Shown one piece after another: positions 1,561 to 55,500 of a stretch of DNA of 64,000 nt (positions within the stretch are counted from its first letter, which is position 1; each line of letters begins with the position of its first letter). Origin of the DNA: Haplodiscus bocki (lineage: Eukaryota); assembly GCA_965655095.1 (NCBI GenBank), contig OZ296650.1, positions 91,264,001-91,328,000 of the forward strand, in the 5' to 3' direction. The notes beneath the pieces are model-generated. The model was not told the origin of the DNA, did no database searches, and was given only the letters and a program-made list of their open reading frames with translations. The position numbers and the translations under genes were made by a program.

Positions 1561-1599
1561 CGTTATCCCTCTCAACGCGAACGTTCTTTTAGGCGTACT

Positions 1600-2025
1600 T
1601 CACAATTGATAAAGTCCTAAATCCGACAAATGTTCACGCGGAACTGACTTTGAGTTTTTTATCGCAATTGTGTGGCAAGGTTGTAGAATGTGACTTAAAT
1701 GGGAAGATTTATCAAACATGTACAATTTTTGTTTTTTTTTATCTTGAAAAATTGTTTTTTTTTAAAAAAAAAACCTAATTTTTTTCCATATTTGCTATAG
1801 TTGGCAACTTAGCTGTAGAATGTTTCTCAAATGATGGTATCTCTTCAAAGTGTCTTTTCCACCCTAATTGTGAGGGTTTGTTGCAGAAAAATCGGAAGTT
1901 TTCTACTTTTGTGAAAGTTTGATGAAGGAAGTTTGTTGGAAAAAAACGCTTTTATCGTTTTATAATGCATCTTTAACAAAATTGGAGGGCGACAAAAAAT
2001 TTGCCGGTGATGGCCGGCCCTTTTC
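1600..2025 (+). mobile_element. Putative non-autonomous Helitron-like repeat
   Basis: Ends in the hairpin GCCGG-tgatgg-CCGGC (2003-2018), in a context similar to the terminus at 59640-59677. Internal GTAGAATGT motifs are shared with 53990-54240. Left boundary uncertain. Confidence 0.4.
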
Positions 2026-4324: not shown

Positions 4325-4516
4325 GTTGTGTACGGAAGATGGTTGGTGGATGGGTACCCCAGAGTGGTGCTATTTGATATTAGCAGCCAAGCGTGGAGAG
4401 TGGAACAATGGAAGAGCGATTTCTACAATGCATGTCACATTGGTGTGCCCTACTACGACAAAGAGGCCATGGATTCTCTAGTGTTTGGCTCACTCGTCAC
4501 TTGGTTTATCGGAGAG
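4325..4516 (+). CDS. GYS: Glycogen synthase exon (visible exon 1, 192 nt)
   Basis: tttag|GTTGTG...GGAGAG|gtgaga; encodes [18 protein letters not shown]...LVTWFIGE. Confidence 0.95.
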
Positions 4517-13500: not shown

Positions 13501-16500
13501 TCGGCTAAAGGAATCTTCCTTTGGATAGAGAGTTATATTTAGTTACCGTTATCGTTATATTTCGTTACCATGATGTATTGAAGGGAATAATGGTCTGTTG
13601 GCAAGAAGTTTGCGTTACCGGCGTTTTCTAGAAGTTCAATCTTAAACAAGGTTGCGATGTTTGGAAGTACAGCGTTGACAATTTTTTCAACAACTGTGAC
13701 CTTAGATGTGTTTTTTAATCATTCCTTCATCTGTGTACTCTTATAGGCCATGTTTTTTTAATGAGTCGTCACGTTTTTCATTTAGATATCCTGACGCCCA
13801 ATGGTATGAATGTTGTGAAATTTGCTGCCTTGCATGAGTTTCAAAATATGCATGCCCAAGCCAAAGCTAAGATTCACGATTTCGTCAGAGGACATTTTTA
13901 CGGGTAAGAATACACGTCTATGACCAGTTATTGTCAATTAATTGAATACTCCCTTTCGTTTGCCATAAGTCGAGTCAAACTTTACAACATAAATGCATGC
14001 ACAGGTCCTATTTTTTTGGTGGATTTTGTATAATAAATTCGAAAACGTTTCATTTTTTTCAGTTGTCTTTGCAAAAGAAAGGATCGCTTTTGCCGCCATC
14101 AAGGGATTGCGATTAAAAATCTATTTCCTCCTTCTTATCGTCTGTTAAAACTTTTTTCTTTGAAATGCGAAACCTTGACAAAATTCAAAGCAGTTTATGT
14201 TGATGGTCTAATCGCTTATCTCGTTTTCCCCTCCTTGCAAGTTTTTTCGAAGAGCGGCTTGGCCTCTGGATTTACTTCCCTCGTCTTCACCCAAGCTAGA
14301 GAGCTTCAGTATTTACTGCAATTCCAGGTACAAAAAGTAATCGATTCAATTCAAATTCTTCAAGTTAGTTCCCATCTTTTTTTTGGATTTGTGAACTTTC
14401 AGCCTATTTTTGCTAAATTCGCTTGATTCCATTTACCATTTTAAGATCTTATGCTTATTGCCTGGCATTCATAATGTATATTTTGTCGTTGCTTTTACTG
14501 AGAAATGTGTCTGACTACTACAGTGGCTTTTGTTTTTTCCGGTCGCGTTATACTACTTACTGTTCAGAATTTTTCAGATAGTACCCATTAATTTTGGAAC
14601 CAGCATTGCACTTCGAAAACGTGAAAACGTTTTCAGCTAGCAAAAAAAGTACTGCAAAGGCATATACCATATTTGTTTTTATTCACACTTTCTGAGACAG
14701 AATGAATCGTAACAACCCTCTACTAAGTTTTGAACTAAAAGTTGAAGATTATACAACTTTTATCAAAGAGGAGTATAATAGCCGCTTTTCGTCCGGAAAG
14801 CCTCGATTTTCTTAAAAACGGACCCCCTGTGGATATTGCGGATGGTATTGGAATGCTTCCAACATGAACGGTGCGTTTACTTGCACTGATCGTTAAAATT
14901 GTTTTTTCAATGAGCGACCAAATTGGATCGATCCATAGCTGAATCAAAGAGTGCTTTATTGCTCTGGCGTAGCTTGCAAGGTGTGTTTTCAAGTTAATGT
15001 GAACTAAATTTTTCCAATGTAGTTCGGGGGTAATAAGCAGGCAAAAGCATGGCTCTTTCCAAGCTTTAGCAACGCAGGGATTGGAAAAAATCTTGAAATT
15101 ATCAATTTTTTTCCAACTTGGGCAAAAACTTTAGGGAGTGTATGCGAAGTATTGGGAGAGGGCAGTGAAGTTAAAATGGTATATAGTTTCGAATTTCATT
15201 ATGGGTTAGTATCCGATCATGGATCTCACCATTCGTAAGTGCTGAGAATGCATGAATCTATGAAAGTTTGTGAACCTGAAATATTTACAACTTGTGTACG
15301 GCGGTTATAGAGGAAGTACCTGGTGTGTGTATCTGGATATGTTGAATTGGGGGAATATGTTCCAATTCTGATACGGTTTCAGTATTCTGCAATGGTTTGA
15401 CCATTCTCGCTCAGTGCTCAGTGAGAGTGGAGGGCATGGCAAAAATCTCGATTTTTTTGGAGTTTTTACCTGCTAGGTCGCACTAAAAAGATTGAGACCT
15501 CCAAATGTAGTGCAGAGTTTAAGTAGGATAGTGAAAGTAGTGGAAAAAGCCGGGGAACTTGAAGTGGATAACAGTTACTGTTCTTTGTTAGGGACAGTAT
15601 CCCCGTGAAGCCGTTGCTTTTACCAAGCTCTGGAAGCTGAGGCAATGGAAAAGCCGTGGAAATCTTGAAATCATTCCAACTTGGGTACAATAGTTAGAGA
15701 GGAAATCAGAGAGAGTAAGCAATGAATATAAAGCTGAGAATAGTTTTGAATTTTGTTGTGAGGTAGTTTCCAGGATAAGGTTTGGCCATTTCGAGCGTCG
15801 GAAAGTTGTTTTTATTTGAGGTTACTTCAACCTGAGTGTTGAGGCTAGAGAGGATGGGCTCAACTTTAGGAGTGGCTGATGAACTTGAAATGGGGAAACG
15901 TTATCAGTTCTAATCCGCTGAAGTATCCTGATCTTATCTTTACCATGGCGAAGTTGTGGGGATGCGAAAAGTCACAAAAATCTAAGAATTCAAGGAAGCT
16001 TTTCCAACTTGGGTTTTGGAGTTGAGGAGCGAGGCCTTAGTGTTGGAAGTGGACCGACAAGTTTCAACTGGATTGATTTCTAACAGACAGTAGTGTCATG
16101 CTGTAGTCAATGTCATGCTGTTTGAAGTTTCTGATTACTTTTCCCCTTAAAATAAAACGTAATGGATGGTAGTCGTTACAAACAATTCCGATGCGTCTAA
16201 GTTTCTTAAATGGGCGTTCAAAAATTACTCGAGAGTATCAGCCTTGAGCGGCTTTGTTTGCCAGTGGTATTTTTAGTACTTGCTGTTTATGTGGTATGGA
16301 CTGTTTTGTAGAAGTTGAAATTGGATTGAAATAATCAATGGCCTCATGTCACTCGGTTACCTCTCCGGGCCTTGCTAAAAGTGTAGCCACAACGGGGGTG
16401 GAGTGATCTATGGAATTTGCTGTAGAAGTATGCCCCATAAAAACACTTTCAATACGAAATTTTACCGCAATTGGTTGCTGGAATTTATTCCGTTTCTAAG

Positions 16501-19500
16501 CATGCCTCTTGTTGTAGTTGCTCAATGGTTTTTCATTCTTTTATAACAGTGGCAAAACGTCAGCTTGATACGGTCCACCTGCGTTTTTTCTCGTTCATTG
16601 GCAATTCGCACAAAATGTATGTGAACTGATTTTAGTCAAAATCAAAGATCTTTTGGGCTGGTGTTCAATGACGACAGCCATGTGCGCTTGACTTTTATGA
16701 TCGTCCGGTTTCGAATCCCACGTCGGTCGAAATTTTGGTCGCTTATTTCCCTTTCTCAGAGTATGGCATCTTCATTGGAAATACGAAATATTTGTTTGAA
16801 TCGGGAGAGATGTGATCTGCGTTGACGATTCTTTTCGCAAGTTCACTCCAAATTGAACTTTTCTCGATTCATGGACTATTTTCGCTGAGATTCAATTTTT
16901 CAAGTTGAGCTTATTCTTTGACCATTGACGGTGATTTTCGTTACTTTCGCTCGATTTCATGCTTCTTTCTTTACGACATCGGTATCGGTTGGAAATTGAC
17001 AACGCTATCATCAAAAAAATTAAATCAATAGTTGGAAAAATCGATAGTTATCTCTAACCTTGTGTTCAAGAAGACCTTGTTTCTGCTGTTTCTCTCACTG
17101 CTTTCGCCTTTTTGGCCATACGGTTAATCTTTTCAGCTACGTTAGCAGTCTACTTTTGTAGAAAACGTTGATTTCTTGGGAAAGGTTCCGAATATCTGAG
17201 GTTTTTGGTGAAAAATGTTTTGTTTCCAAAATGGCCAAAATTTGGTCAGTTTCTCGATTGTCAGAATTTTCAAAATTCTGTTCTGAATGTCAGTTTTTAG
17301 CAGCGCGTCCAAAGGAATGAAACGGGCGCAACATGTGCTTTCGAAGATCTGTGGAGTTTTTGCGGCTTTTTGGTTTTCTGACACGTTTTTTTGTGCTATA
17401 TTTGAACCAATTTTGGCTAAAATTTCATTTTCACCTTGATTTTCGCACCTTTAATTTCCTTATTCACTCTCTTTCCTCTGGGCCGAAGTAATGTGATGTA
17501 GAAGCACAAATACGGATAGGTAGACGAAGTTTTGCAGTTGTTTTTCTGGGATTTTTTTGTTTCGAATTATTTTTCCATTTTTTGACTTGAGCGAAACATT
17601 TTCCTGGTTGCGTTCTAATTTTGCTTTTCAGCTACAAGGGCATCAAAATCCTTTAAGACGGGACAAATCCTTACTAAGTGCTAGATTTTTAAATCCGTCT
17701 GCTTGAAATTCGTCGGTTTTGGGTTTTCTAATCTGTATATTCAGCTAAACGTACGATTTTGGCATGCCTTTTCTCGTTGGTCCTGCAAATCATGTTTTTG
17801 AATTTGACTTCAGCTAATCTCAATAGAAAGTGTTGCAATCTGAAATCTTCTGGTTTTTGAAGTTTTTGGCAAAGTGGTTCTTTTTGCGCTTCCTTTTCAG
17901 CATTTTTGTTTCCTGCGTTCGTGAGCATTTTAGCTTATAGTTGTTCTTCTGTTCCCCAAGTAGGCCCTCTGTCTACATTTGCAGCAAGTACAGTTCAAAC
18001 TCAATAGTTACTGCTAAAAATATATCGAGTTTAGGAAATGTGAGGTAATCTGCTATTTATACCATGAGAGAGCCTTCTCTGCGCTATAGGGTGCTTATTC
18101 TTGCTATTGTTTTCAAGTGAAGTCTGGCAATAAAACAAGTTTTCTGTTTTTGTAAAGTTTTCGTACTTTATGCGGTCAGAAAAATTTTGCGGTCTTCAAC
18201 AGAAACCCCAGAATTTGTTTTTAGAGTGTCTGGCCAGTTTCATTTTTTCACTGATGTAAAGTTCTGTTTCGATAATCTCGGAAGTTTTCATATGGCTTTC
18301 GAGAGCTTATCGCCGATATCTATACTTAGTGCTGTTGCAAATTCTCGGAAGAATGGCGGAATTTCTTGGGCCAGCTTCAGGACCCTATGCTTGGCCTCTG
18401 TGCAACACTAGAGACTAGCAAGTCTTAAGGAGTCGTTCCGTCAACCACTTTTTTCATCCGTTCAATACTTCTCCGTCGCAGAGTGTGCGTTTTCGATAGT
18501 GCTGAAATTTGTTCATGTCACGTTGTTACCTTTCGAATTTTTGTTCACGTGCCCCAATATCAGTGTACTTAATAAAAAAAACGCTCCGCTGGTCTTATGG
18601 AGTTTCAGGGCTCAAATGCTTCCAATTTTCCTCTCGAAAATTTTCAATTTGTAGTTCGAAAATTGAGGATGTTTTTACGGTCATCTTTCATTAAGGGTGG
18701 TCTTACACAAGACTTTCATTTGGCTGGCATTTCTTCGTCGGTGTTTTGAGTTTGCGCTACCTACCTAGTGGTCCTGTAGACGGGCAGTGATTAACTTTTC
18801 TAACGAAATTTTTTGACTTGGATTTTTTCTGGGGTTGTTCGTGAGATTTTTTTGCTCAATTACAACTGCTCGGATTGAGTCCATCTGGTGATGATTCAAG
18901 TAGTCGCTGCAGAAGTTTTTGGGCAAGTTACCGGGTAGGTTTGTTTGCAATCATCTCCGATTATACTTTGATTTTGGTTTTTGAGAAATTAAGGTAATAC
19001 AACTCAACGTCGCTTGTTAAGTGTTTTTCCTATTATATGATGGTCGGGCTGGGTGCATCCGGTAGTAGTTCAAATGTCTGTTACTAGGATTTCCTGGGTT
19101 GTTTCATTCCCAACGTTTTTTGTTAAATTTTGCAACTTTTTCTTCCGAAATTGAAGAGTTTTTAAATTGCCCGTTGTTTCTGTTAACGACCACTAGTAAA
19201 TATTCTCGGACTTCAATTATCTACTTTTCATTTGGAAGATATGCACAATCAAGAATCTGCAGAGAAGGAAAGATGTCCGGTTTCTTACTTTAGCGAAATC
19301 TCTCGACTCATGGCTCATGCATAGTTTTGGGATTATTTTGAATCCAAAAAATTTGTGTCTCCAAAGTTGTTTTTCTCAAAAACTACTGGTCAGGGTATGT
19401 TCCTCCAGTTCTCATTCATGATGCTACACCATAGGAAATGCCTGGAGAAACCGGGATATACTGTCTCGTTTCCCTGCATGAGTTTTTTTGGCCTGTTGTC

Positions 19501-22500
19501 TGATTTTTGAAAAATTAATACTCCGCGTCTTTCTCGGAGGAAATTGGTGGTTGGATTGCGGCCATCTTGTGCTCATTCCAAATCCAGCAAAGTACGAAAC
19601 CGGTGGAGTAGCTGGAAAGTAGCTCTTTTTTGCAGATCTGTGTTTTATTTCTTCTTCACTGGAATCTGTTTTTCACGACAATCAATAAAACCATTTTCGT
19701 CTGTTGGCATTTAGTCTCTGCTCTTGCTGACTGTAGTCGCAAGTGCCGCTTCGACGACCCTGTGTAGAGTATGAAGTGCCTCTTTTGTAGCAGTATTGTT
19801 TCTTAAATTCCGCGGTGAAATAATCAGGAGAGGTTTTTCTGGCCATTTTTTGCCTGCTGTCGCAGAGGCAATTGATTGTTCGAACCATAGCGTAAACTAG
19901 TAAGCTCATGTTTTGCATTTTTGTTTCTTGATACATGTTGATTCCTGATTCGTGCTAGCACGGATATAAATAATTGAAGGTGGTAAGTCGAAAGTAGTTG
20001 AAGGTTGAGATCCTATTCTTGTGAGGTAGTATCCAGGAAATGGTTTGGCCATTTCGAGCGTCGGAAAATTGTTTTTATTTGAGGTTACTTCAACCTGAGT
20101 GTTGAGGCTAGGGAGGATGGGCGCAACTTTAGGAGTGGCTGATGAAATTGAAATGGGGAAACGTTATCAGTTCTAATCCGCTGAAGTATCCTGATGTTAT
20201 CTTTATCATGGCGATGTTGTGGGGATGCAAGAAGTCACAAAAGTCTAAGAATGCAAGGAAGCTTTTCCAACTTGGGTTTTGGAGTCGAGGAGCGAGGCCT
20301 TAGTGTTGGAAGTGGACCGACAAGTTTCAACTGGATTGATTTCTAACAGACATTAGTGTCTGGTCAAACGACCAGTCAATGTCATGCTGTTTGAATTTTT
20401 TTTATTACTTTTCCCCTTAAAACAAAACGGTAATGGATGGTAGTCGTTACAAACAATTCCGATGCGTCCAAGTTTCTTAAATGGGCGTTCAAAAATTACT
20501 CGGGTATCAGCCTTGAGCGGCTTTGTTTGCCAGTGGTATTTTTAATACTTGCTGTTTATGTGGTATGGACTGTTTTGTAGAAGTTGAAATTGGATTGAAA
20601 TAATCAATGGCCTCTTGTCACTCGCTTACCTCTCCGGGCCTTGCTAAAAGTGTAGCCACAACGGGGATGGGGTGATCTATGGAATTTACTGTAGAAGTTT
20701 TCCCCATAAAAACACTTTCAATACGAAATTTTACCGCATTTGGTTGCTGGAATTTATTCCGTTTCTAAGCACGCGTCTTCTTGTGGTTGCTCAATGGTTT
20801 TTCATTCTTTTATAACAGTGGCAAAACGTCAGCTTGATACGGTCCACCTGCGTTTTTTATCGTTCGTTGGCAATTCGCACAAAATGTATGTGAACTGATT
20901 TTAGTCAAAATCAAAGATCTTTTGGGCTGGTGTTCAATGACGACAGCCATGTGCGCTTGAGTTTTATGATCGTCCGGTTTCGAATCCCACGTCGGTCGAA
21001 ATTTTGGTCGCTTATTTCCCTTTCTCAGAGTATGCCATCTTCATTGGAAATACGAAATATTTGTTTGAATTGGGAGAGATGTGATCTGCGTTGACGATTC
21101 TTTTCGCAAGTTCACTCCAAATTAAACTTTTCTCGATTCATGGACTATTTTTGCTGAGATTCAATTTTTCAAGTTGAGCTTATTCTTTGACCCTTGACGG
21201 TGATTTTCGTTACTTTCGCTCGATTTCATGCTTCTTTCTCTACGACATCGGTATCGGTTGGAAATTGACAACGCTATTATCAAAAAAATTTAATCAAGAG
21301 TTTGGAAACATCGATAATTATCTCTAACCTTGTGTACAAGAAGACCTTGTTTCTGCTGTTTCTCTCACTGCTTTCCCCTTTTTGGCCTTACGGATAATCT
21401 TTTCAGCTACGTTAGCAGTCTACTTTTGTAGAAAACGTTGATTTCTTGGGAAATGTTCCGAATATCTGAGGTTTTTGTTGAAAAATGTTTTGTTTCCAAA
21501 ATGGCTAAATTTTGGTCAGTTTCTCGATTGTCAGAATTTTCAAAATTCTGTTCTGAATGTCAGTTTTTGGCAGCGCGTCCAAAGGAATGAACGGGCGCAA
21601 CATGTGCTTTCGAAGATCTGTGGAGTTTTTGTGGCTTTTTGGTTTTCTGACACATTTTTTTGTGCTATATTTGAACCAATATTGGCTAAAATTTCATTTT
21701 CACCTAAATTTTCGCACCTTTAGTTTCCTTATTAACTCTCTTTCCTCTGGGCCGAAGTAATGTGATGCAGAAGCACAAATACGGATAAGTAGACGAAGAA
21801 GTTTTGCAGTTGTTTTTCTGGGATTTTTTTTGTTTTGGATTATTTTTCCATTTTTTGACGTGAGTGAAACGTTTTCCTGGTTGCGTTCTAATTTTGATTT
21901 TCAGCTACAAGGGCATCAAAATCCTTTAAGGCGGGACATATCCTTACTAAGTGCTAGATTTTTAAATCCGTCTGCTCGAAATTCGTCGTTTTTGGGTTTT
22001 CTAATCTGTACATTCAGCTAAAGGTACGATTTTGGCATGGCTTTTCTCGTTGGTCCTGCAAATCATGTTTTTGAATATGACTTCAGCTAATCTCAATAGA
22101 AAGTGTTGCAATCTGAAATCTTCTGGTTTTTGAAGTTTTTGGCAAAGTGGTTCTTTTTGCGCTGCCATTTCAGCTTTTTTGTTTCCTGCGATCGTGAGCT
22201 TTTTAGCTTATAGTTGTTGTTCTGTTCCCCACGTAGGCCCTCTGTGTACATTTGCAGCAAGTACAGTTCAAACTCAATATTTACTGCTGAAAATATCTCG
22301 AGTTTAGGAAATGTGAGGTAATCTGCTATTCAAACCATGAGAGAGCCTTCTCTGCGCTATAGGGTGCTTATTCTTGCTATTGCTTTCAAGTGAAGTCTGG
22401 CAATAAAACAAGATTTCTGTTTTTGTGAAGTTTTCATACTTTTTGCGGTCAGAAAAGTTTTGCAGTCTTCAACAGAAACCCCAGAATTTGTTTTTAGTAT

Positions 22501-34500: not shown

Positions 34501-37500
34501 CCGTCTGCTCGAAATTCGTCGTTTTTGGGTTTTCTAATCTGTACATTCAGCTAAACATACGATTTTGGCATGCCTTTTCTCGTTGGTCCTGCAAATCATG
34601 TTTTTGAATATGACTTCAGCTAATCTCAATAGAAAGTGTTGCAATCTGAAATCTTCTGGTTTTTGAAGTTTTTGGCAAAGTGGTTATTTTTGCGCTGCCA
34701 TTTCAGCATTTTTGTTTCCTGCGATCGTGAGCTTTTTAGCTTATAGTTGTTCTTCTGTTCCCCAAGTAGGCCCTCTGTCTACATTTGCAGCAAGGACAGT
34801 TCAAACTCAATATTTACTGCTAAAAATATCTCGTTTAGGAAATGTGAGGTAATCTGCTATTTAAACCATAAGAGAGCCTTCTCTGCGCTATAGGGTGCTT
34901 ATTCTTGCTATTGTTTTCAAGTGAAGTTTGGCAATAAAACAAGTTTTCTGTTTTTGTGAAGTTTCCATACTTTTTGCTGTCAGAAAAGTTTTGCAGTCTT
35001 CAACACAAACCCCAGATTTTGTTTTTAGTATGCTCGCCAGTTTCATTTTTTTACTGATGTAAAGTTCTGTTTCGATAAGTTTTCATATGGCTTTCGAGAG
35101 CTTATCGCCGATATCTATACTTAGTGCTGTTGCAAATTCTCGGAAGAATGACGGAATTTCTTGGGCGAGCTTCAGCACCCTATGCTTGGCCTCTGTGCAA
35201 CACTAGAGACTAGCAAGTCTTACGGAGTCGTTTCGTCAACCACTTTTTTCATCCGTTCAATACTTCTCCGTCGCAGAGTGTGCGTTTTTGATAGTGCTGA
35301 AATTTGTTCATGTCACGTTGTTACCTTTCGATTTTTTGTTTACTTGCCCCAATATCAGAGTACTTTTTAAAGAAGACCGCTACGGTGGTCTTATGGAGTT
35401 TCAGGGCTCAAATGCTTCCAATTTTCCTCTCGAAAATTTTCAGTGTGTAGTTCGAAAATTAACGATGTTCTTACGGTCATCTTTCATTAAGGGTGGTCTT
35501 ACACAAGACTTTCATTTGGCTTGCATTTTTTCGTCGGTGTTTTGAGTTTGCGCTACCTACCTGGTGGTCCTGTAGACGGGCAGTGATTAACTTTTCTAAC
35601 GAAAATTTTGACTTGGATTTGTTCTGGGGTTGTTCGTGAGAATTGTTTCGCTCAATTACAACTGCTCGGATTGGGTCCATCTGGTGATGATTCAAGTAGT
35701 CGCTGCAGAAGTTTTTGGGCAAGTTACCGGGTAGGTTTGTTTGCAATCATCGCCGATTATACTCTGAATTTGGTTTTTGAGAAATTAAGGTAATACAACT
35801 CAACATGGCTTGTTAAGTGTTTATCTTATTATCTGATGGTCGGGCTGGGTCCATCCGGTACTAATTCGAATGTCTGTTACTAGGATTTCCTGGGTTGTTT
35901 CATTCCCAACCTTTTTTGTTAAATTTTGCAACTTTTTCTTCCGAAAATGAAGAGTTTTTAACTTGCCCGTTGTTTCTGTTAACGACCACTAGTAATTATT
36001 CTTCGGACTTCAATTATCCACTTTTCATTTGGAAGATATGCACAATCAAGAATCTGCAGAGAAGGAAAGATGTCTGGTTTCTTACTTTAGCGAAATCTCT
36101 CGACTCATGGTTCATGCATAGTTTTGGGATTTTTTTGAATCCAAATTTTTTGCGTCTCCAAAGTTGTTTTTCTCAAAAACTACTGGTCAGGGTATGTTCC
36201 TCCAATTCTCATTCATGATCCTACATCATAGGAAATGCCAGGAGGAACCGGGATGTACCGTCTCGTTTCCCTGCATGAATTTTTTTGGCCTGTTGTCTGA
36301 TTTTTGAAAAATTAATACTCCGCGTCTTTCTCGGAGGAAATTGGTGGTTGGATTGCGGCCATCTTGTGCTCATTCCAAATCCAGCAAAGTACGAAACCGG
36401 TGGAGTAGCTGGAAAGTAGCTCTTTTTTGCAGATCTGTGTTTTATTTCTTCTTCACTGGAATCTGTTTTTCACGACAATCAATAAAACCATTTTCGTCTG
36501 TTGGCATTTAGTCTCTGCTCTTGCTGACTGTAGTCGCAAGTGCCGCTTCGACGACCCTGTGTAGAGTATGAAGTGCCTCTTTTGTAGCAGTATTGTTTCG
36601 TAAAACTCGCGGTGAAATGATCAGGAGAGGTTTTTTGGCCATTTTTTGCCTGCTGTCGCAGAGGCAATTGATTGTTCGAACCATAGCGTAAACTAGTAAG
36701 CTCATGTTTTGCATTTTTGTTTCTTGATACATGTTGATTCCTGATTCGTACTAGCACGGATATAAATAATTGAAGGTGGTAAGTCGAAAGTAGTTGAAGG
36801 TTGAGATCCTGTTCTTGTGAGGTAGTATCCAGGAAATGGTTTGGCCATTTCAAACGTCGGAAAGTTGTTTTTATTAGAGGTTGCTTCAACCTGAGTGTTG
36901 AGGCTAGGGAGGATCGGCGCAACTTTAGGAGTGGCTGATGAACTTGAAATGGGGAAACGTTATCAGATCTAATCCGCTGAAGTATCCTGATCTTATCTTT
37001 ACCATGGCGAAGTTGTGGGGATGCAAGAAGTCACAAAAATCTAAGAATTCAAAGCTTATTCTAAGGAAGCTTTTCCAACTTGGGTTTTGGAGTTGAGGAG
37101 CGAGGCCTTAGTGTTGGAAGTGGACCGACAAGTTTCAACTGGATTGATTTCTAACAGACAGTAATGTCTGGTCAAACGACCAGTCAATGTCATGTTGTTT
37201 GAAGTTTCTGATTACTTTTCCCCTTAAATTAAAACGGTAATGGATGGTAGTCGTTACAAACATTCCCGATGCGCGCAAGTTTCTTAAATGGGAGTTCAAA
37301 AATTACTCGTGAGTATCAGCCTTGAGCGGCTTTGTTTGCCAGTGGTATTTTTTTAATACTTGCTGTTTATGTGGTAACAAATGCTTTGTAGAAGTTGAAA
37401 TTGGATTGAAATAATCGATGGCCTCATGTCACTCGCTTACCTCTCCGGGCCTGCTTGAAGTGTAGTCACAATGTGGGTGGGGTGATCTATGGAATTTGCT

Positions 37501-46500: not shown

Positions 46501-49500
46501 CGGTTGGAAATTGACAACGCTATCATCAAAAAAATTTAATCAAGAGTTTGGAAACATCGATAATTATCTCTAACCTTGTGTACAAGAAGACCTTGTTTCT
46601 GCTGTTTCTCTCACTGCTTTCCCCTTTTTGGCCATACGAAAAATCTTTTCAGCTACGTTAGCAGTCTACTTTTGTAGAAAACGTTGATTTCTTGGGAAAC
46701 GTTCCGAATATCTGAGGTTTTTGTTGAAAGATGTTTTGTTTCCAAAATGGTCAAAATTTAGTCAGTTTCTCGATTGTCAGAATTTTCAAAATTCTGTTCT
46801 GAATGTCAGTTTTTAGCAGCGCGTCCAAAGAAATGAAACGGGGGCAACATGTGCTTTTGAAGATCTGTGGAGTTTTTGTGGCTTTTGCGTTTTCTGACAC
46901 ATTTTTTTGTGCTATATTTGAACCAGTGTTGGCTAAAATTTCTTTTTCACCTAAATTTTTGCACCTTTCATTTCCTTATTCACTCTCTTTCCTCTGGGCC
47001 GAAGTAATGTGATGCAGAAGCACAAATACGGATAAGTAGACGAAGAAGTTTTGCAGTTGTTTTTCTGGGATTTTTTTTGTTTTGAATTATTTTTCCATTT
47101 TTTGACTTGAGTGAAACATTTTCCTGGTTGCGTTCTAATTTTGCTTTTCAGCTACAAGGGCATCAAAATCCTTTAAGACGGGACATATCCTTACTAAGTG
47201 CTAGATTTTTAAATCCGTCTGCTCGAAATTCGTCGTTTTTGGGTTTTCTAATCTGTACATTCAGCTAAACATACGATTTTGGCATGCCTTTTCTCATTGG
47301 TCCTGCAAATCATGTTTTTGAATATGACTTCAGCTAATCTCAATAGAAAGTGTTGCAATCTGAAATCTTCTGGTTTTTGGCAAAGTGATTCTTTTTGCGC
47401 TGCCTTTTCAGCATTTTTGTTTCCTGCGTTCGTGAGCATTTCAGCTTATAGTTGTTCTTCTGTTCCCCAAGTAGGCCCTCTGTCTACATTTGCAGCAAGT
47501 ACAGTCCAAACTCAATATTTACTGCTAAAAATATCTTGAGTTTAGGAAATGTGAGGTAATCTGCTATTTAAACCATGAGAGATCCTTCTCTGCGCTATAG
47601 GGTGCTTATTCTTGCTATCGTTTTCAAGTGAAGTCTGGCAATAAAACAAGTTTTCTGTTTTTATGAAGTTTTCATACTTTTTGCTGTCAGAAAAATTTTG
47701 CAGTCTTCAACACAAACCCCAGAATTTGTTTTTAGTATGCTCGCCAGTTTCATTTTTTACTGATGTAAAGTTCTGTTTCGATAAGTTTTCATATGGCTTT
47801 CGAGAGCTTATCGCCGATATCTATACTTAGTGCTGTTGCAAATTCTCGGAAGAATGGCGGAATTTCTTGGGCGAGCTTCAGCACCCTATGCTTGGCCTCT
47901 GTGCAACACTAGAGACTAGCAAGTCTTACGGAGTCGTTTCGTCAACCACTTTTTTCATCCGTTCAATACTTCTCCGTCGCAGAGTGTGCGTTTTTGATAG
48001 TGCTGAATTTTGTTCATGTCACGTTGTTACTTTTCAAATTTTTGTTTACTTGCCCCAGTATCAGAGTACTTATTAAAGAAGACCGCTACGCTAGTTTCAG
48101 GGCTCAAATGCTTCCAATTTTCCTCTCGAAAATTTTCAATATGTAGTTCGAAAATTAACGATGTTTTTACGGTCATCTTTCATTAGGGGTGGTCTTAAAC
48201 AAGACTTTCATTTGGCTTGCATTTTTTCGTCGGTGTTTTGAGTTTGCGCTACCTACCTAGTGGTCCTGTAGACGGGCAGTGATTAACTTTTCTAACGAAA
48301 GTTTTGACTTGGATTTTTTTTGGGGTTGTTCGTGAGAAATGTTTTGCTCAGTCGCAACTGCTCGGATTGGGTCCATCTGGTGATGATTCAAGTAGTCGCT
48401 GCAAAAGTTTTTGGGCAAGTTACCGGGTGCGTTTGTTTGCAATCATCGCCGATTAATTTCTGAATTTGGTTTTTGAGAAATTAAGGTAATACAACTCAAC
48501 GTGGCTTGGAAAAGGTTTTTCTTATTATCTGATGATCGGGCTGGGTCCATCCGGTAGTAATTCGAATGTCTGTTACTAGGATTTCCTGGGTTGTTTCATT
48601 CCCAACCTTTTTTGTGAAATTTTGCAACTTTTTCTTCCGAAAATGAAGAGTTTTTAACTTGCCCGTTGTTTCTGTTAACGACCACTAGTAATTGTTCTTC
48701 GGACTTCAATTATCCACTTTTCATTTGGAAGACATGCACAATCAAGAATCTGCAGAGAAGGAGAGATGTCTGGTTTCTTACTTTAGCGAAATCTCTCGAC
48801 TCATGGTTCATGCATAGTTTTGGGATTTTTTTAAATCCAAAATTTTTGCGTCTCCAAAGTTGTTTTTCTCAAAAACTACTGGTCAGGGTATGTTCCTGCA
48901 GTTCTCATTCATGATCCTACATCATGGGAAATGCCAGGAGGAACCGGGATGTACCGTCTCGTTTCCCTGCATGAATTTTTTTGGCCTGTTGTCATTTTTG
49001 AAAAATTAATACTCCGCGTGTTTCTCGGAGGAAATTGGTGGTTGGATTGCGGCCATCTAGTGCTGATTCCAAATCCAGCAATGTAAGAAACCGGAGGAGT
49101 AGCTGGAAAGTCCTCTTTTTTGCAGATCTGTATTGTATTTCTTCTTTACTGGAATCTGTTTTTCACGACAACCAATAAAACCACTTTCGTCTGTTGGCAT
49201 TTAGTCTCTGCTCTTGCTGACTGTAGTCGCAAGTGCCGCTTCGACGACCCTGTGTAGAGTATGAAGTGCCTCTTTTGTAGCAGTATTGTTTCGTAAAACT
49301 CGCGGTGAAATAATCAGGAGAGGTTTTTCTGGCCATTTTTTGCCTGCTGTCGCAGAGGCAATTGATTGTTCGAACAATAGCGTAAACTAGTAAGCTCATG
49401 TTTTGCATTTTTGTTTCTTGATACATGTTGATTCCTGGTTCGTGCTAGCACGGATATAAATAAATGAAGGTGGTAATTCGAAAATAGTTGAAGGTTGTTC

Positions 49501-52500
49501 CTTGTGAGGTAGTATCCAGGAAAAGGTTTGGCCATTTCGAGCGTCGGAAATTTGTTTTTATTTGAAGTTACTTCAACCTGAGAGTTGAGGCTAGGGAGGA
49601 TGGGCGCAACTTTAGGAGTGGCTGATGAACTTGAAATGGGGAAACGTTGTCAGTTTTAATCCGCTGAAGTATCTTGATCTTATCTTTACCATGGCGAAGT
49701 TGTGGGGTTGCAAGAAGTCGCAAAAATCTAGGAATTCAAGGAAGCTTTTCCAACTTGGGTTTTGGAGTTGAGGAGCGAGGCCTTAGTGTTGGAAGTGGAC
49801 CGACAAGTTTCAACTGGATTGATTTCTAACAGACAGTAATGTCTGGTCAAACGACCAGTCAATGTCATGTTGTTTGAAGTTTCTGATTACTTTTCCCCTT
49901 AAATTAAAACGGTAATGGATGGTAGTCGTTACAAACATTCCCGATGCGCGCAAGTTTCTTAAATGGGAGTTCAAAAATTACTCGTGAGTATCAGCCTTGA
50001 GCGGCTTTGTTTGCCAGTGGTATTTTTTTAATACTTGCTGTTTATGTGGTAACAAATGCTTTGTAGAAGTTGAAATTGGATTGAAATAATCAATGGCCTC
50101 ATGTCACTCGCTTACCTCTCCGGGCCTGCTTAAAGTGTAGTCACAATGGGGGTGGGGTGATCTATGGAATTTGCTGTAGAAGTTTTTCCCATAAAAACAC
50201 TTTCAATACGAAATTTTACCGCAATTGGTTGCTGGAATTTATTCCGTTTCTAAGCACGCGTCTTGTTGTAGTTGCTCAATGGTTTTTGATTCTTTCATAA
50301 CACTGGCAAAACATCAGCTTAATACGGTCCACCTGCGTTTTTTCTCGTTCGTTGGCAATTCACACAAAATGTATGTGAACTGATTTTAGCCAAAATCAAA
50401 GATCTTTTGGGCTGGTGTTCAATGACGACAGCCATGTGCGCTTGAGTTTTATGATCGTCCGGTTTCGAATCCCACGTCGGTCGAAATTTTGGTCGCTTAT
50501 TTCCCTTTCTCAGAATATGGCATCTTCATTGGAAACACGAAATATTTTTTTGAATCGGGAGAGATGTGATCTGCGTTGACGATTCTTTTCGCAAGTTCAC
50601 TCCAAATTGAACTTTTCTCGATTCATGGACTATTTTTGCTGAGATTCAATTTTTCAAGTTGAGCTTATTCTTTGACCCTTGACGGTGATTTTCGTTACTT
50701 TCGCTCGATTTCATGCTTCTTTCTCTACGACATCGGTATCGGTTGGAAATTGACAACGCTATCATCAAAAAAATTTAATCAAGAGTTTGGAAACATCGAT
50801 AATTATCTCTAACTTTGTGTACAAGAAGACCTTGTTTCTGGTGTTTCTCTCACTGCTTTCCTCTTTTTGGCCATACGAATAATCTTTTCAGCTACGTTAG
50901 GAGTCTACTTTTGTAGAAAACGTTGATTTTTTGGGAAACGTTCCCAATATCTGAGGTTTTTGTTGAAAGATGTTTTGTTTCCAAAATGGCCAAAATTTAG
51001 TCAGTTTCTCGATTGTCAGAATTTTCAAAATTCTGTTCTGAATGTCAGTTTTTAGCAGCGCGTCCAAAAGAATGAAACGGGCGCAACATGTGCTTTTGAA
51101 GATCTATGGAGTATTTGTGGCTTTTTGGTTTTCTGACACATTTTTTTGTGCTATATTTGAACCAGTATTGGCTAAAATTTCATTTTCACCTAAATTTTTG
51201 CACCTTCAATTTCCTTATTCACTCTCTTCCTCTGGGCCGAAGTAATGTGATGCAGAAGCACAAATACGGATAAGTAGACGAAGAAGTTTTGCAGTTGTTT
51301 TGCTGGGATTTTTTTGTTTTGAATTAATTTTCCATTTTTTGACTTGAGTGAAACGTTTTCCTGGTTGCGTTCTAATTTTGCTTTTCAGCTACAAGGGCAT
51401 CAAAATCCTTTAAGACGGGACATATCCTTACTAGGTGCCAGATTTTTAAATCCGTCTGCTCGAAATTCGTCGTTTCTGGGTTTTCTAATCTGTACATTCA
51501 GCTAAACGTACGATTTTGGCATGCCTTTTCTCGTTGGTCCTGCAAATCATGTTTTTGAATATGACTTCAGCTAATCTCAATAGAAAGTGTTGCAATCTGA
51601 AATCTTCTGGTTTTTGGCAAAGTGATTCTTTTTGCGCTGCCTTTTCAGCATTATTGTCTCCTGCGTTCGTGAGCATTTTAGCTTATAGTTGTTCTTCTGT
51701 TCCCCAAGTAGGCCCTTTGTCTACATTTGCTGCAAGTACAGTTCAAACTCAATATTTACTACTAAAAATATCTCGAGTTTAGGAAATGTGATGTAATCTG
51801 CTATTTAAACCATGAGAGAGCCTTCTCTGCGCTATAGGGTGCTTATTCTTGCTATCGTTTTCAAGTGAAGTCTGGCAATAAAACAAGTTTTCTGTTTTTC
51901 TGAAGTTTTCATACTTTTTGCTGTCAGAAAAATTTTGCAGTCCTCAACAGAAACCCCAGAATTTGTTTTTAGTATGCTCGCCAGTTTCATTTTTTTACTG
52001 ATGTAAAGTTCTGTTTCGATAAGTTTGCATATGGCTTTCGAGAGTTTATCGCCGATATCTATACTTAGTGCTGTTGCAAATTCTCGGAAGAATGGCGGAA
52101 TTTCTTGGGCCAGCTTCAGCACCCTATGCTTGGCCTCTGTGCAACACTAGAGACTAGCAAGTCTTACGGAGTCGTTTCGTCAACCACTTTTTTCATCCGT
52201 TCAATACTTCTCCGTTGCAGAGTGTGCGTTTTCGATGGTGCTGAAATTTGTTCATGTCACGTTGTTACCTTTCGAATTTTTATTCACGTGCCCCGATATC
52301 AGAGTACTTATTAAAGAAAACCGCTACGCTGGTCTTATGGAGTTTCAGGGCTCAAATGCTTCCAATTTTCCTCTCGAAAAATTTCATTATGTAGTTCGAA
52401 ACTAAAAGATGTTTTTTATGGTCATCTTTCATTAAGGGTGGTCTTACACAAGACTTTCATTTGGCTTGTATTTTTTCGTCGGTGTTTTGCGTTTGCGCTA

Positions 52501-55500
52501 CCTACCTAGTGGTCCTGTAGACGGGCAGTGATTAACTTTTCTAACGAAATTTTTTGACTTGGATTTTTTCTGGGGTTGTTCGCGAGATTTGTTTTGCTCA
52601 ATTACAACTGCTCGGATTGGGTCCATCTGGTGATGATTCAAGTAGTCGCTGCAGAAGTTTTTGGGCAAGTTACCGGGTAGGTTTGTTTGTAATCATCTCC
52701 GATTATACTCTGAATTTGGTTTTTGAGAAATTAAGATAATACAACTCAACGTGGCTTGTTAAGTGTTTTTCCTATTATCTGATGGTCGGGCTGCGTCCAT
52801 CCGGTAGTAATTCAAATGACTGTTACTAGGATTTCCTGGGTTGTTTCATTTCCAATTTTTATTGCGAGTTTTTGCAACTTTTTCTTCCGAAATTGAAGCG
52901 TTTTTAACTTGCCCGATGTTCCTGTTAACGACCACTAGTAAATATTCTTCGGACTTCAATTATCCACTTTTCATTTGGAAGATATGCACAATCAAGAATC
53001 TGCAGAGAAGGAAAGGTGTCCGGTTTCTTACTTTAGCGAAATCTCTCGACTCATGGTTCATGCCCAGTTTTGGGATTCTTTTAAATCCAAAATTTTTGCG
53101 TCTCCAAAGTTGTTTTTCTCAAAAACTACTGGTCAGGGTTTGTTCCTCCAATTCTCATTCATGATCCTACACCATAGGAAGTGCCTGGAGAAACCGGGAT
53201 ATTCCGTCTCGTTTCCCTGCATGAGTTTTTTTGGCCTGTTGTCTGATTTTTGAAAAATTAATACTCCGCGTGTTTCTCGGAGGAAATTGGTGGTTGGATT
53301 GCGGCCATCTTGTGCTCATTCCAAATCCAGCAAAGTACGAAACCGGCGGAGTAGCTGGAAAGTAGCTCTTTTTTTGCAGATCTATGTTTTATTTCTTCTT
53401 CACTGGATTCTGTTTTTCACGACAATCAATAAAACCATTTTCGTCTGTTGGCTTTTAGTCTCTGCTCTTGCTGACTGTAGTCGCAAGTGCCGCTTCGACG
53501 ACCCTGTGTAGAGTATGAAGTGCCTCTTTTGTAGCAGTATTGTTTCGTAAAACTCGCGGTGAAATAATCAGGAGAGGTTTTTCTGGCCATTTTTTGCCTG
53601 CTGTCGCAGAGGCAATTGATTGTTCGAACCATAGCGTAAACTAGTAAGCTCATGTTTTGCATTTTTGTTTCTTGATACATGTTGATTCCTGGTTAGTGCT
53701 AGCACGGATATAAATAATTGAAGGTGGTAAGTCGAAAAAAGGTTGAGATCCTGTTCCTTGTCTTAGAATCAAAAATGACAATTTTGCAATTCTTTCAATG
53801 AACCTTTTTTTCGGTAGTTTTTTTGGAAGCTGATGAGTATTGATGCTTTGAAACCGATAATTCTATTGCAAGTCACGAGTGATGAAAGCTGCGGTCGTCT
53901 TGCGCCCATGTTGCATGTATGGAAGGAAAATCATTTATTGAACATGTTTTTTTAATGCATGAATTTGCCAATTGCAAGCTCAAATTTTTTAATTCGCCAA
54001 ATTGTTGTAGAATGTGTTTATTACAGTTGCTTTTCTCAAAAAATCAATTTGCTTACCAAAATTTAGTTTTTTTTGAAAAAAGTTCTGTATAAATCATACT
54101 TTTAAATTTTGTAGTTTATGATATCAATGGGAAAAGTGGCAATTTTTCAAAAAAAATAGATTTCAAAAAGAGAAAAATTAATGTTAACGCATTCATCGTA
54201 AATTTGGGTGACGGAAATTATAACGGAGGTATTTGAGCGTAATCAAAAGCACCAGCTTCAGTATTCGCAACCTTCTCTTTGCTTTTGATACCAAAAATTA
54301 TGAATCATTGAGTTGAGTTTTTTTTCTGTTTTCAGCAATTTGCTGAAAAAGCAATTGCATTTATATAAGATTGATTGAGTGAAAGAAATTTCGAACTTCT
54401 GGTTTGATTGGTGAGGAAAAATTGTCTGAAACCTAGTTTCATGCTTTGTAAGGCAGTGGGTTGGGTATTCTGGTCACCAGGAAAATGCAGAAATTTTCAG
54501 AGGAATTCCGAAATAACGGATATCATTGTCAATTTTTTTCAGGCATTTCACTTTCGACCTGGAACAAACTATATACATGTTCACAGCTGGTAGATACGAA
54601 TTCAGCAACAAGGGCGCCGACATGTTCCTTGAAGGACTAGCCCGATTAAATTACATGCTGAAAGTAGGTTACGCATCACCTCGTACTGGCACCATTTCGG
54701 CTTGAAACACCCACCTGAATTTGCAAAGAAAATTTTGACTCGTTGTTGGTTACAATAATTTTGGCATCAATTTTCGATCTCGGTCACATTTTATTCGTTC
54801 TTGGACTCAAAGGTGGGATTTTTTAGTAGCATAATTTAGTGCGCTACTTTGCAAAAATTGAAAAATGCACAGATTTTAGAACTAAGAATCAAACATGTTT
54901 TTAATTTCGAATTTTCAGAAGAAACCAATGTGTTGGTTTTAGTCATCCGGCAGCACCACAACAGTCGTTGCTCTCCTCATATTCCCTGCCCGTACAAACA
55001 ATTTTAACGTGGACTCGCTCAAAGGACAGGCTGTTGTAAAGCAACTCAAGTTAGTCACTTTTCGTACATTTTCATAGCTGACTCTTAAACTTCGTACTTT
55101 TTCAAACAACCTAACTTATACATTACTCATTTTAAGCTTTTTATTTTCATGAAGAAATACTGTCTTCAACTAACATTGATTGTCTCCCAAGTTCCCGCTA
55201 GTTTTAGAACTCGAGATTCTCAGTGCTTCTTTCTTGATCCTTTGGGCAATAGGAGTTCGACTTTTAAATCAGTTTGTAAGCAATCCAATTTTTTTCAGAG
55301 AAACAGTTGCGAGCATCCAGAACAAAATCGGAGACAGACTTTTTGAAAGCTGTTTGAGACAAAAGGTGCCGGAAAGTTCAGAACTATTGCAGCAGAATGA
55401 TTTAGTACAGTTGAAGAGATGTATTTACTCGTTGCAAGTTGGTAACTAAGCATATTTTTGCTCATCAGGTGGTTATTCGTCTTTGGTAAATCTCATTTTT

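What the first reader, a model, noticed from the sequence alone, without database searches (positions are those of the whole stretch)
15760..53761. 38-kb, 9 x 4.2-kb macrosatellite inside a glycogen synthase intron
Nine complete units expand what would be a ~7-kb intron to 40,639 nt in a core metabolic gene whose exons remain intact. The unit is not rDNA, a histone cluster or an intact transposon. It is an arbitrary slice of decayed retroelement-like DNA plus a tRNA-like module. Units differ by many substitutions and indels, so the array has been turning over for some time. It is a candidate copy-number-variable locus that could affect GYS transcription time, chromatin or splicing (inference).
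Basis: seen in the sequence. Interest (0 to 1): 0.8.

Follow-up and report, generated by a model that had tools for sequence, protein, structure and literature searches.

The report
Nine-copy 4.2-kb repeat in glycogen-synthase intron
A 4.2-kb piece of ordinary intron DNA in this animal's only glycogen synthase gene was copied head-to-tail nine times, stretching a roughly 7-kb intron to 40.6 kb; the array is real and old, but it looks like passenger DNA, not a working element.

Summary
Window 15760-53761 holds exactly nine head-to-tail units of 4170-4266 nt, with pairwise K2P divergence of 2.9-6.2%. The array lies in a 40,639-nt GT..AG intron (13904-54542) of the genome's single glycogen synthase gene, whose exons are intact and in order.

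What it is:
- **Where it came from:** it arose in place. An old dispersed repeat runs unbroken from the unique left flank into unit 1 but is cut off at the internal junction tested. The junction carries a 4-nt TTGT microhomology. The whole unit occurs nowhere else in the 1.5-Gb assembly.
- **What the unit contains:** fragments of several old (60-75% identical), non-coding dispersed repeats in otherwise unique intron DNA. Twenty open frames gave no Pfam domain, and ARAGORN and Rfam gave no tRNA.
- **History:** units are mosaics, with at least 46 exchange events, and neighbouring units are more alike than distant ones. Diversity along the unit shows no conserved island.
- **Independent support:** short-read contigs from two other samples break at the array edge. 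Collapsed in-array contigs are 6-9.5 times as deep as the flank, which argues against an assembly artefact.

No RNA data were available, so splicing is inferred from the gene being single-copy and intact. Scan notes (not checked here) list several other macrosatellites in this genome. This is an ordinary new member of a known kind.

The parts
15760..53761 (+). Tandem array of nine whole units of about 4.2 kb (38,002 nt). Unit starts: 15760, 20023, 24206, 28383, 32553, 36819, 41084, 45268, 49506.
   Evidence: Self-BLAST; flanks do not match the array; alignment and divergence; all nine genomic copies lie only here.
13904..54542 (+). The glycogen synthase intron that holds the array: 40,639 nt, GT..AG, phase 2.
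   Evidence: Splice sites read; flanking exons abut at human GYS1 residues 314|315.
13786..13903 (+). Glycogen synthase exon just upstream of the array intron (..DILTPNG..RGHFYG). The start is inferred from an AG acceptor.
   Evidence: PDB match to GYS residues 275-314, E 6e-17; sequence read; PF05693 hit.
54543..54663 (+). Glycogen synthase exon just downstream of the array intron ([13 protein letters not shown]). The end is inferred from a GTAGGT donor.
   Evidence: PDB match to GYS residues 315-355, E 8e-15; PF05693 hit.
15756..15759 (+). TTGT in the unique left flank, identical to the last four bases of every unit: a 4-nt microhomology at the founding duplication junction.
   Evidence: Junction sequences printed.
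15487..16253 (+). An old dispersed-repeat copy that runs unbroken across the outer left boundary at 15760. Its right part starts every unit (shown at the 36819 junction; the other junctions follow from unit identity).
   Evidence: Dispersed copies L026, L028 and L029 align continuously over 15487-16253, 15674-16079 and 15514-16066, but at the internal junction 36819 their main alignments begin at 36821-36853.
16558..18699 (+). In unit 1 (and the same place in every unit), a fragment of about 2.1 kb of an old, non-coding dispersed element (unit positions about 799-2940). It holds the B-box-like 11-mer at 16708-16718.
   Evidence: About 61% identity to copies on C10, C8, C5, C7 and C3; no long open frames in those copies; sharp shared terminus; 11-mer.
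19155..19237 (+). A segment of about 85 nt (unit positions about 3396-3478) present in units 1, 5, 6, 8 and 9 and deleted in units 2, 3, 4 and 7.
   Evidence: BLAST gaps; alignment columns 3428-3512; a dispersed repeat piece spans its right edge, so presence is the older state.
4319..4567 (+). Upstream glycogen synthase exon region (Pfam positions 69-151); edges approximate.
   Evidence: PF05693 exon-by-exon hits.
57309..57641 (+). Open frame holding the highly conserved glycogen synthase exon (Pfam positions 444-545), single-copy in the genome.

Best explanation
The array is a locally born tandem segmental amplification. A 4.26-kb slice of the intron, itself unique DNA peppered with old transposon fragments, was first duplicated head-to-tail by a repair or replication error. 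That error joined its end to its start at a 4-nt TTGT microhomology, the signature of polymerase-theta end joining or template switching. Once two copies existed, unequal exchange between misaligned copies raised the number to nine. Gene conversion and further exchange then shuffled variants among units while mutations accumulated to 3-6%. The array has no product. It is transcribed as part of the glycogen synthase pre-mRNA and removed with the intron, so its only predictable effect is a longer primary transcript. Shown: the structure, the local origin, uniqueness in the genome, the mosaic units, and an intact single-copy host gene. Inferred: the repair pathway, the growth mode, neutrality, and removal by splicing.
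For: (1) Nine whole units with sharp edges. A whole number of copies is what duplication of one defined segment gives. (2) The left flank and every unit end in TTGT. My estimate of 4 or more nt of junction microhomology arising by chance at this base composition is about 2%. Microhomology is a hallmark of polymerase-theta-dependent tandem duplications (PMC13031629). (3) Three dispersed copies of an older repeat align unbroken across the outer left edge, but only rightwards from the unit start at the internal junction tested. The breakpoint therefore cut a repeat copy that was already there. (4) The full unit has nine copies in the 1.5-Gb assembly, all here. Elsewhere there are only 100-480-nt pieces at 65-75% identity, or about 2 kb at 61%. 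The DNA abutting both edges is unique. (5) There are 221 informative sites in clear blocks shared by non-adjacent units, and at least 46 exchange events. Divergence rises from 4.1% between neighbours to about 5.3% between distant units. Shared variants sit in physically contiguous units more often than in shuffled orders (73 sites against 33, p=0.009). (6) There is no sign of constraint. Diversity is 2.5-8% in every 200-nt window. No Pfam domain was found in 20 frames, and no Rfam or tRNA hit. The one open frame seen in all units is frame-shifted in units 5-7. (7) All 11 PF05693 hits in the genome belong to this one gene, in order over profile positions 9-582. The conserved exon is single-copy, so the 40.6-kb intron must be spliced for the animal to make glycogen synthase. 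(8) In short-read contigs of two samples, unique-flank contigs stop at 15767-15785. Collapsed array contigs have 6-9.5 times the flank's k-mer depth in sample S1.
Against: No long read or RNA read was available. The four runs are short-read contigs from one study, and the tool warns that contig depth is not a copy number. Nine copies is thus supported, not measured. Neutrality rests on absence of evidence: enhancers, small-RNA sources or chromatin effects need no open frame and little sequence conservation. A 4-nt microhomology has about a 2% chance of being a coincidence. The sense strand of the array is unusually T-rich (AT skew -0.21 against about -0.09 in the other introns). This is only partly explained by the T-rich dispersed element it carries.
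Confidence: 0.8

Rival explanations
1. Assembly artefact: one or a few units were wrongly expanded, or two haplotypes were stitched together, so the real intron is much shorter.
For: Tandem repeats are error-prone in assemblies. No long read spanning the array could be examined. Mosaic units could in principle come from chimeric assembly.
Against: Units differ by 2.8-6.0% and each carries 13-55 private substitutions, enough for long accurate reads to tell them apart. Independent short-read contigs, which differ from the assembly by SNPs and indels in the flank, show collapsed in-array contigs at 6-9.5 times the flank depth, and the flank contigs break at the array edge. No second copy of the locus exists on unplaced contigs.
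Confidence: 0.05
2. Functional array: the repeat acts in proportion to its copy number on glycogen synthase, for example as a block of enhancers or silencers, a heterochromatin or small-RNA source, or a delay line for transcription.
For: Large tandem repeats often have local effects on methylation and expression in humans (abstract of bioRxiv 10.1101/2020.12.16.423078). Satellite-filled introns need special handling in Drosophila (PMC6508621). The array has persisted long enough to diverge 3-6%. A possible depth difference between the two samples hints at copy-number variation.
Against: No conserved island exists along the unit. No RNA family, tRNA or protein domain was found. The unit's edges cut an older repeat arbitrarily. 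Scan notes list several other kilobase-unit arrays of dead genes and transposons in this genome (not checked here), so no special explanation is needed.
Confidence: 0.08
3. Transposon-borne or transposon-seeded satellite: the array came in with, or was generated by, a mobile element, as with the hAT-derived array noted elsewhere in this genome.
For: About half of the unit is an old dispersed element (unit positions 799-2940). Scan notes describe transposon-seeded arrays in this genome.
Against: The unit's edges do not coincide with the element's ends: the element terminus is at unit position about 799, not at the junction. The unit also holds pieces of at least four other repeat families and unique DNA. 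The full unit is found nowhere else. The DNA abutting the array is unique and shows no element ends. The left breakpoint lies inside a different, pre-existing repeat copy.
Confidence: 0.04

Closest known systems
Macrosatellites and large VNTRs of vertebrate genomes (for example D4Z4, DXZ4 and intragenic kilobase-unit VNTRs)
   Same: Head-to-tail array of kilobase-sized units at a single locus, with units homogenised by exchange. Such arrays can sit within genes and can affect nearby chromatin and expression (abstract of bioRxiv 10.1101/2020.12.16.423078; the names and properties of D4Z4 and DXZ4 are from my own knowledge and the abstracts).
   Different: D4Z4 and DXZ4 units carry a gene or CTCF and promoter features and are GC-rich, and their copy number is known to vary widely. 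Here the unit is AT-rich (39% GC) with no detectable gene, RNA or conserved block. Copy-number variation is not shown.
Satellite-filled gigantic introns of Drosophila Y-linked fertility genes (kl-3, kl-5)
   Same: Tandem repeats expand an intron of an essential gene whose exons stay intact, so the repeats are transcribed and spliced out (PMC6508621).
   Different: Those introns are megabases of simple short-unit satellite and need a dedicated expression programme. This one is 38 kb of a complex 4.2-kb unit in a housekeeping metabolic gene. A 40-kb intron is unremarkable for a 1.5-Gb genome whose same gene also has introns of about 18 kb and 8 kb.
Microhomology-mediated tandem duplications (polymerase-theta end joining; replication template switching)
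   Same: A simple head-to-tail junction with a few bases of microhomology and no inserted DNA, within non-repeated breakpoints (PMC13031629).
   Different: Those studies describe single new duplications. Here the founding event was followed by amplification to nine copies and long divergence. The enzyme involved cannot be read from the sequence.
Other kilobase-unit arrays noted in this same genome (hAT-insertion array, dead SET-gene array, Nup54-fragment array)
   Same: The same genome and the same general process: a local segment copied head-to-tail many times and left to decay (scan notes; not re-tested here).
   Different: Those arrays are built from a recognisable gene or transposon and have 28-80 copies. 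This one is built from anonymous intron DNA, has nine copies, and sits inside an active single-copy gene.

Membership tests
Macrosatellite (large-unit tandem array) | Units arranged head-to-tail without spacers | tested here: met
   Unit n ends where unit n+1 starts at all eight internal junctions.
Macrosatellite (large-unit tandem array) | Unit length in the kilobase range with several copies at one locus | tested here: met
   Nine units of 4170-4266 nt, and all genomic copies are at this locus.
Macrosatellite (large-unit tandem array) | Copy number varies among individuals | tested here: inconclusive
   Contig depth ratios are 6-9.5x in sample S1 and 7-18x in sample S2, but contig depth is not a copy number and the unique-depth baseline in S2 is unclear.
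Transposon-derived satellite or mobile array | The repeating unit, or its junction, also occurs dispersed elsewhere, or the array is bounded by element ends | tested here: not met
   There is no other full unit in 1.5 Gb. The DNA next to the edges is unique. The unit edges do not match the element ends.
Retroelement (LINE or LTR) remnant | Recognisable reverse transcriptase, integrase, gag or endonuclease remnants | tested here: not met
   No Pfam family reaches threshold in the 20 longest open frames of units 5, 6 and 9. Dispersed relatives have no long frames in the homologous part.
tRNA gene or tRNA-derived SINE head | Cloverleaf or tRNA-model match, or both A and B boxes | tested here: not met
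   ARAGORN finds 0 genes. Rfam shows no tRNA at gathering score or at E<=5 in a unit. There is only a one-mismatch B-box-like 11-mer at unit position 949, and no A box was evident when I read the sequence upstream of it.
rDNA or histone repeat | The unit encodes rRNA or histones | tested here: not met
   No Rfam hit and no Pfam hit.
Glycogen synthase, eukaryotic type (Pfam PF05693), the host gene | Match to the family profile over most of its length, exons in order and open | tested here: met
   Eleven exon-wise hits cover profile positions 9-582 of 639, all above the cut-off and in order on one strand. PDB matches to the C. elegans, human and yeast enzymes have E down to 4e-17.
Glycogen synthase, eukaryotic type (Pfam PF05693), the host gene | The mRNA is actually spliced across the array intron | not testable with these tools
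   No RNA run was listed for this organism. Splicing is inferred from canonical splice sites and from the gene being the only copy.

The most novel reading that the evidence does not exclude
The array is a copy-number-variable intronic module that tunes the animal's only glycogen synthase gene. It could do this by nucleating repressive chromatin or small RNAs, or by adding a delay to each round of transcription, so that individuals with different copy numbers differ in glycogen storage.
Probability: 0.05. Interest if true: 0.55.

Novelty: new member of a known kind. Interest (0 to 1): 0.22.

Why it matters
The array is a clean, fully resolved example of how a macrosatellite is born from anonymous DNA. 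The founding breakpoint, its microhomology, the older repeat it cut through and the later exchange history are all still readable. It also sits inside a single-copy core metabolic gene, which makes it a convenient natural test of whether intron length or repeat copy number affects expression. On present evidence it does nothing, and scan notes point to several similar arrays in the same genome, so it changes no current view.

Tried and rejected
- **Tandem Repeats Finder:** it cannot see a 4.2-kb period, and found only two small unrelated repeats.
- **tRNA-like module:** ARAGORN, Rfam at gathering score and Rfam at E<=5 on one unit gave nothing. The only hits were chance-level snoRNA and lncRNA matches at E 2-3.
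- **Retroelement content:** two Pfam scans of 20 open frames from units 5, 6 and 9 gave only sub-threshold noise.
- **Internal repeats or terminal inverted repeats in the unit:** only short chance-level matches.
- **Conserved open frame:** the minus-strand frame at unit positions about 3926-4195 is open in all units but changes frame in units 5-7, so I rejected it as a gene.
- **Class of the 2.1-kb dispersed element:** its terminus is sharp and carries a small hairpin. I could not assign it to a transposon class.
- **RNA evidence:** no RNA run was offered, and the single runs search was used on a mixed exon-and-array stretch, so the exon-exon junction was not tested.
- **Organism identity:** names are coded and a words search of scan notes gave nothing. 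I ran no further search on it.
- **Frames in other introns that looked like reverse transcriptase by eye (6339-7403, 529-931):** Pfam does not confirm them.
Full report

Yes. A BLAST of the first putative unit against the window finds nine head-to-tail copies.
- Unit starts are 15760, 20023, 24206, 28383, 32553, 36819, 41084, 45268 and 49506, and the array ends at 53761.
- Unit lengths are 4170-4266 nt.
- Neither flank has any similarity to the array, so the array holds a whole number of copies with sharp edges.
- A MAFFT alignment of the nine units (4298 columns) gives pairwise substitution divergence of 2.8-6.0% and indels of 8, 9, 10, 12 and 85 nt.
- K2P distances are 2.9-6.2%, with a mean of 4.6%.
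- The window contains no N.
- Tandem Repeats Finder did not report the array only because its longest period is 500.

**2. The host gene**

Open frames on the + strand read as glycogen synthase.
- The frame ending at 13903 matches residues 275-314 of human muscle glycogen synthase, and the equivalent residues of the C. elegans and yeast enzymes, at E about 1e-17.
- The frame starting at 54544 matches residues 315-355.
- The donor is GG|gtaaga and the acceptor ttttcag|G. The intron is 13904-54542, 40,639 nt, phase 2.
- Without the array the intron would be 2,637 nt, and with a single unit about 6.9 kb.

A six-frame search of the whole 1.5-Gb assembly with Pfam PF05693 finds 11 exon-sized hits.
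- All hits are in one gene on contig C3, in order, covering profile positions 9-582 of 639.
- The most conserved exon (57309-57641) is single-copy in the genome.

This is therefore the animal's only detectable glycogen synthase gene, and its exons are intact. The gene also has other long introns of about 18 kb and about 8 kb.

**3. What the unit is made of**

I searched the whole assembly with the unit in one piece and in three pieces.
- The full unit exists only as the nine copies at this locus.
- Elsewhere there are only short, old pieces (65-75% identity, 60-480 nt). They match unit positions about 60-320, 799-1142 (the most abundant), 1350-2145, 3419-3537 and 3773-3992.
- More sensitive alignment shows that the 799-1142 piece is the end of a longer dispersed element. 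That element is collinear with the unit from about 799 to about 2940 at about 61% identity.
- Copies of this element have no long open frames in the homologous part.
- The copies share a sharp terminus containing a 6-bp-stem hairpin. I could not class the element.

- Twenty open frames from units 5, 6 and 9 give no Pfam family above threshold, and none related to transposons.
- ARAGORN finds no tRNA in the window.
- Rfam finds nothing at gathering score, and no tRNA even at E<=5 in a unit.
- The only tRNA-like trace is GTTTCGAATCC, one mismatch from a B box, at unit position 949 inside the dispersed element. No A box was evident when I read the sequence upstream of it.

"Decayed retroelement-like DNA plus a tRNA-like module" is thus not supported. 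[quoted passage not shown] is what the tests show.

**4. Origin in place**

Three observations fit together.
- **Microhomology:** the left flank ends in TTGT, every unit ends in TTGT, and the right flank shows no similarity to the unit start. The founding junction (unit end to unit start) therefore has a 4-nt microhomology. I estimate the chance of 4 or more nt at this base composition at about 2%.
- **A pre-existing repeat was cut:** three dispersed copies of an older repeat (L026, L028, L029) align continuously from the unique left flank into unit 1, over 15487-16253, 15674-16079 and 15514-16066. At the internal junction 36819 their main alignments begin only at 36821-36853. The left breakpoint therefore cut through a repeat copy that was already in the intron. 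That copy is whole once, at the outer edge. The other seven junctions were not aligned separately, but they share the same sequence.
- **No mobile-element ends:** the DNA directly abutting both edges is unique in the genome, so the array is not the inside of a mobile element.

A whole number of copies is what duplication of one defined segment followed by unequal exchange produces. Microhomology at simple tandem-duplication junctions is a hallmark of polymerase-theta end joining (PMC13031629). Which pathway acted here is inference.

**5. History after birth**

- **Mosaic units:** of 221 parsimony-informative sites, many define mutually incompatible groupings arranged in blocks of 100-500 nt. 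Examples by alignment column are units 1+4 at 351-363, units 6-9 at 458-568, units 1+8 at 620-861, units 3+4 at 912-1054, units 3+6 at 1392-1503 and units 2+3+8 at 3843-3970.
- **Exchange events:** the four-gamete test needs at least 46 exchange events. Some of these could be recurrent mutation.
- **Distance effect:** neighbours are more alike (4.1%) than units 5-8 apart (5.1-5.4%). Shared variants sit in physically contiguous units more often than in shuffled orders (73 against 33 sites, p=0.009).
- **The 85-nt segment:** it is absent from units 2, 3, 4 and 7. A dispersed repeat piece spans its right edge, so absence is a deletion that later spread to a non-adjacent unit.

All this is the usual signature of unequal exchange and gene conversion in a tandem array.

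If the neutral rate is 1-5e-9 per site per year, the closest pair (2.9%) last shared sequence roughly 3-14 million years ago. That rate is my assumption, because the organism is not known to me, so this is an order-of-magnitude inference only.

**6. Any sign of function?**

None was found.
- Diversity among units is 2.5-8.0% in every 200-nt window, with no conserved island.
- The one open frame present in all units changes frame in units 5-7.
- CpG is hardly depleted (observed/expected 0.90), the same as neighbouring introns.
- The sense strand of the array is markedly T-rich (AT skew -0.21 against -0.07 to -0.095 in the other introns). The dispersed element in the same orientation is also T-rich elsewhere (-0.11 to -0.19), which explains part of this but not all.
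- Poly(A)-signal hexamers on the sense strand are not depleted relative to composition: 22 AATAAA against about 11 expected.

**7. Is it an assembly artefact?**

No long reads could be examined. Four runs of one study (two samples, organism coded) hold the stretch as short-read contigs. I laid them on 14100-20099.
- The unique-flank contig (14100 to 15767-15785) stops at the array edge in three runs.
- That contig differs from the assembly by SNPs and small indels, so it is not simply the assembled haplotype.
- Flank k-mer depth is 31.7, 34.7 and 8.76 in the three runs of sample S1.
- Contigs inside the array that collapse several units have depth 218-300, 206-252 and 57-77 in the same runs, which is 6-9.5 times the flank.
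- The tool warns that contig depth is not a copy number. I use it only as support for "many copies, of the order of nine".
- In sample S2 the ratios are 7-18 times depending on which flank contig is taken as baseline. This may hint at copy-number difference but is unresolved.
- Each unit carries 13-55 private substitutions, and no extra copy of the locus exists on unplaced contigs.

Taken together, an artefact is unlikely.

**8. Mechanism and consequence**

The best reading has five steps.
- A microhomology-mediated tandem duplication of a 4.26-kb intron slice occurred first.
- Unequal exchange then amplified it to nine copies.
- The copies diverged over a long time, with conversion shuffling variants between them.
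- The array has no product.
- It is transcribed within the pre-mRNA and removed by splicing.

At typical RNA polymerase II speeds of 1-4 kb per minute (general knowledge), 38 kb adds roughly 10-40 minutes per transcript. That figure is inference, and any effect on expression is untested.

**9. Comparison and novelty**

- The array meets the structural definition of a macrosatellite. It lacks the gene or regulatory content of the well-known human ones, and its copy-number variation is not shown.
- It resembles in kind, but not in scale, the satellite-filled introns of Drosophila Y-linked genes (PMC6508621).
- Large tandem repeats can affect nearby genes in humans (abstract of bioRxiv 10.1101/2020.12.16.423078). 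A regulatory role therefore cannot be excluded, but nothing here points to one.
- The scan's own notes list several other kilobase-unit arrays in this genome: a hAT insertion, a dead SET-domain gene, Nup54 fragments and others. I did not re-test these. They suggest that such amplification is common here.

Verdict: a real, well-resolved and ordinary array. It is a new member of a known kind and of low interest, apart from being a tidy worked example and a possible natural test of intron-length effects.

Noticed in passing
window 59018-59507 (and 58947-58957): A 127-nt tandem repeat, 3.9 copies at 74% match, lies in a downstream glycogen synthase intron. Just next to it is a perfect B-box 11-mer, GGTTCGAATCC. 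ARAGORN and Rfam (E<=1) find no tRNA there. It may be a SINE-like element with a tandem-repeat tail.
   Followed up: partly
window 11629-11843: A 118-nt repeat of 1.8 copies (78% match) lies in the intron upstream of the exon at about 12300.
   Followed up: no
window 15255 (runs X2; also 14513 in X3 and X4): Short-read contigs of the other samples leave the assembly's sequence at 15255 (sample S2) and 14513 (sample S1) and run on into unrelated letters. These are possible insertion or deletion polymorphisms in the unique part of the same intron.
   Followed up: no
L022 (G000:C8:30607377-30616377) and L025 (G000:C3:88987272-88997271): These two loci on different chromosomes are 90-93% identical over about 4.9 kb plus 0.7 kb, including DNA outside the dispersed element. 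In L022 the two blocks are separated by about 3.4 kb that carries open frames of 233-448 aa. This looks like a segmental duplication with a later insertion. The frames were not scanned.
   Followed up: no
unit position about 799; window 16558, 33351 and so on; L021-L025 near position 1000: The abundant dispersed element has a sharply defined end that starts with a small hairpin (GCTGGC AAAC GCCAGC) followed by TTATTACGGTCGAC. Its class is not determined, and there are at least 40 copies in the genome.
   Followed up: partly
window 15760-53761 compared with other introns: The sense strand of the array is unusually T-rich (T 36.7%, A 23.9%; AT skew -0.21) compared with -0.07 to -0.095 in the gene's other introns. 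This is only partly explained by the T-rich dispersed element it carries.
   Followed up: partly
window 1-2000: This stretch has a higher GC content (0.458 against about 0.38 elsewhere). Its open frames looked like transposon remnants by eye, but Pfam gave no match for 529-931.
   Followed up: partly
whole window: CpG observed/expected is about 0.8-0.9 in the introns and the array, so there is little CpG depletion. This suggests weak or absent germline CpG methylation of this region.
   Followed up: no
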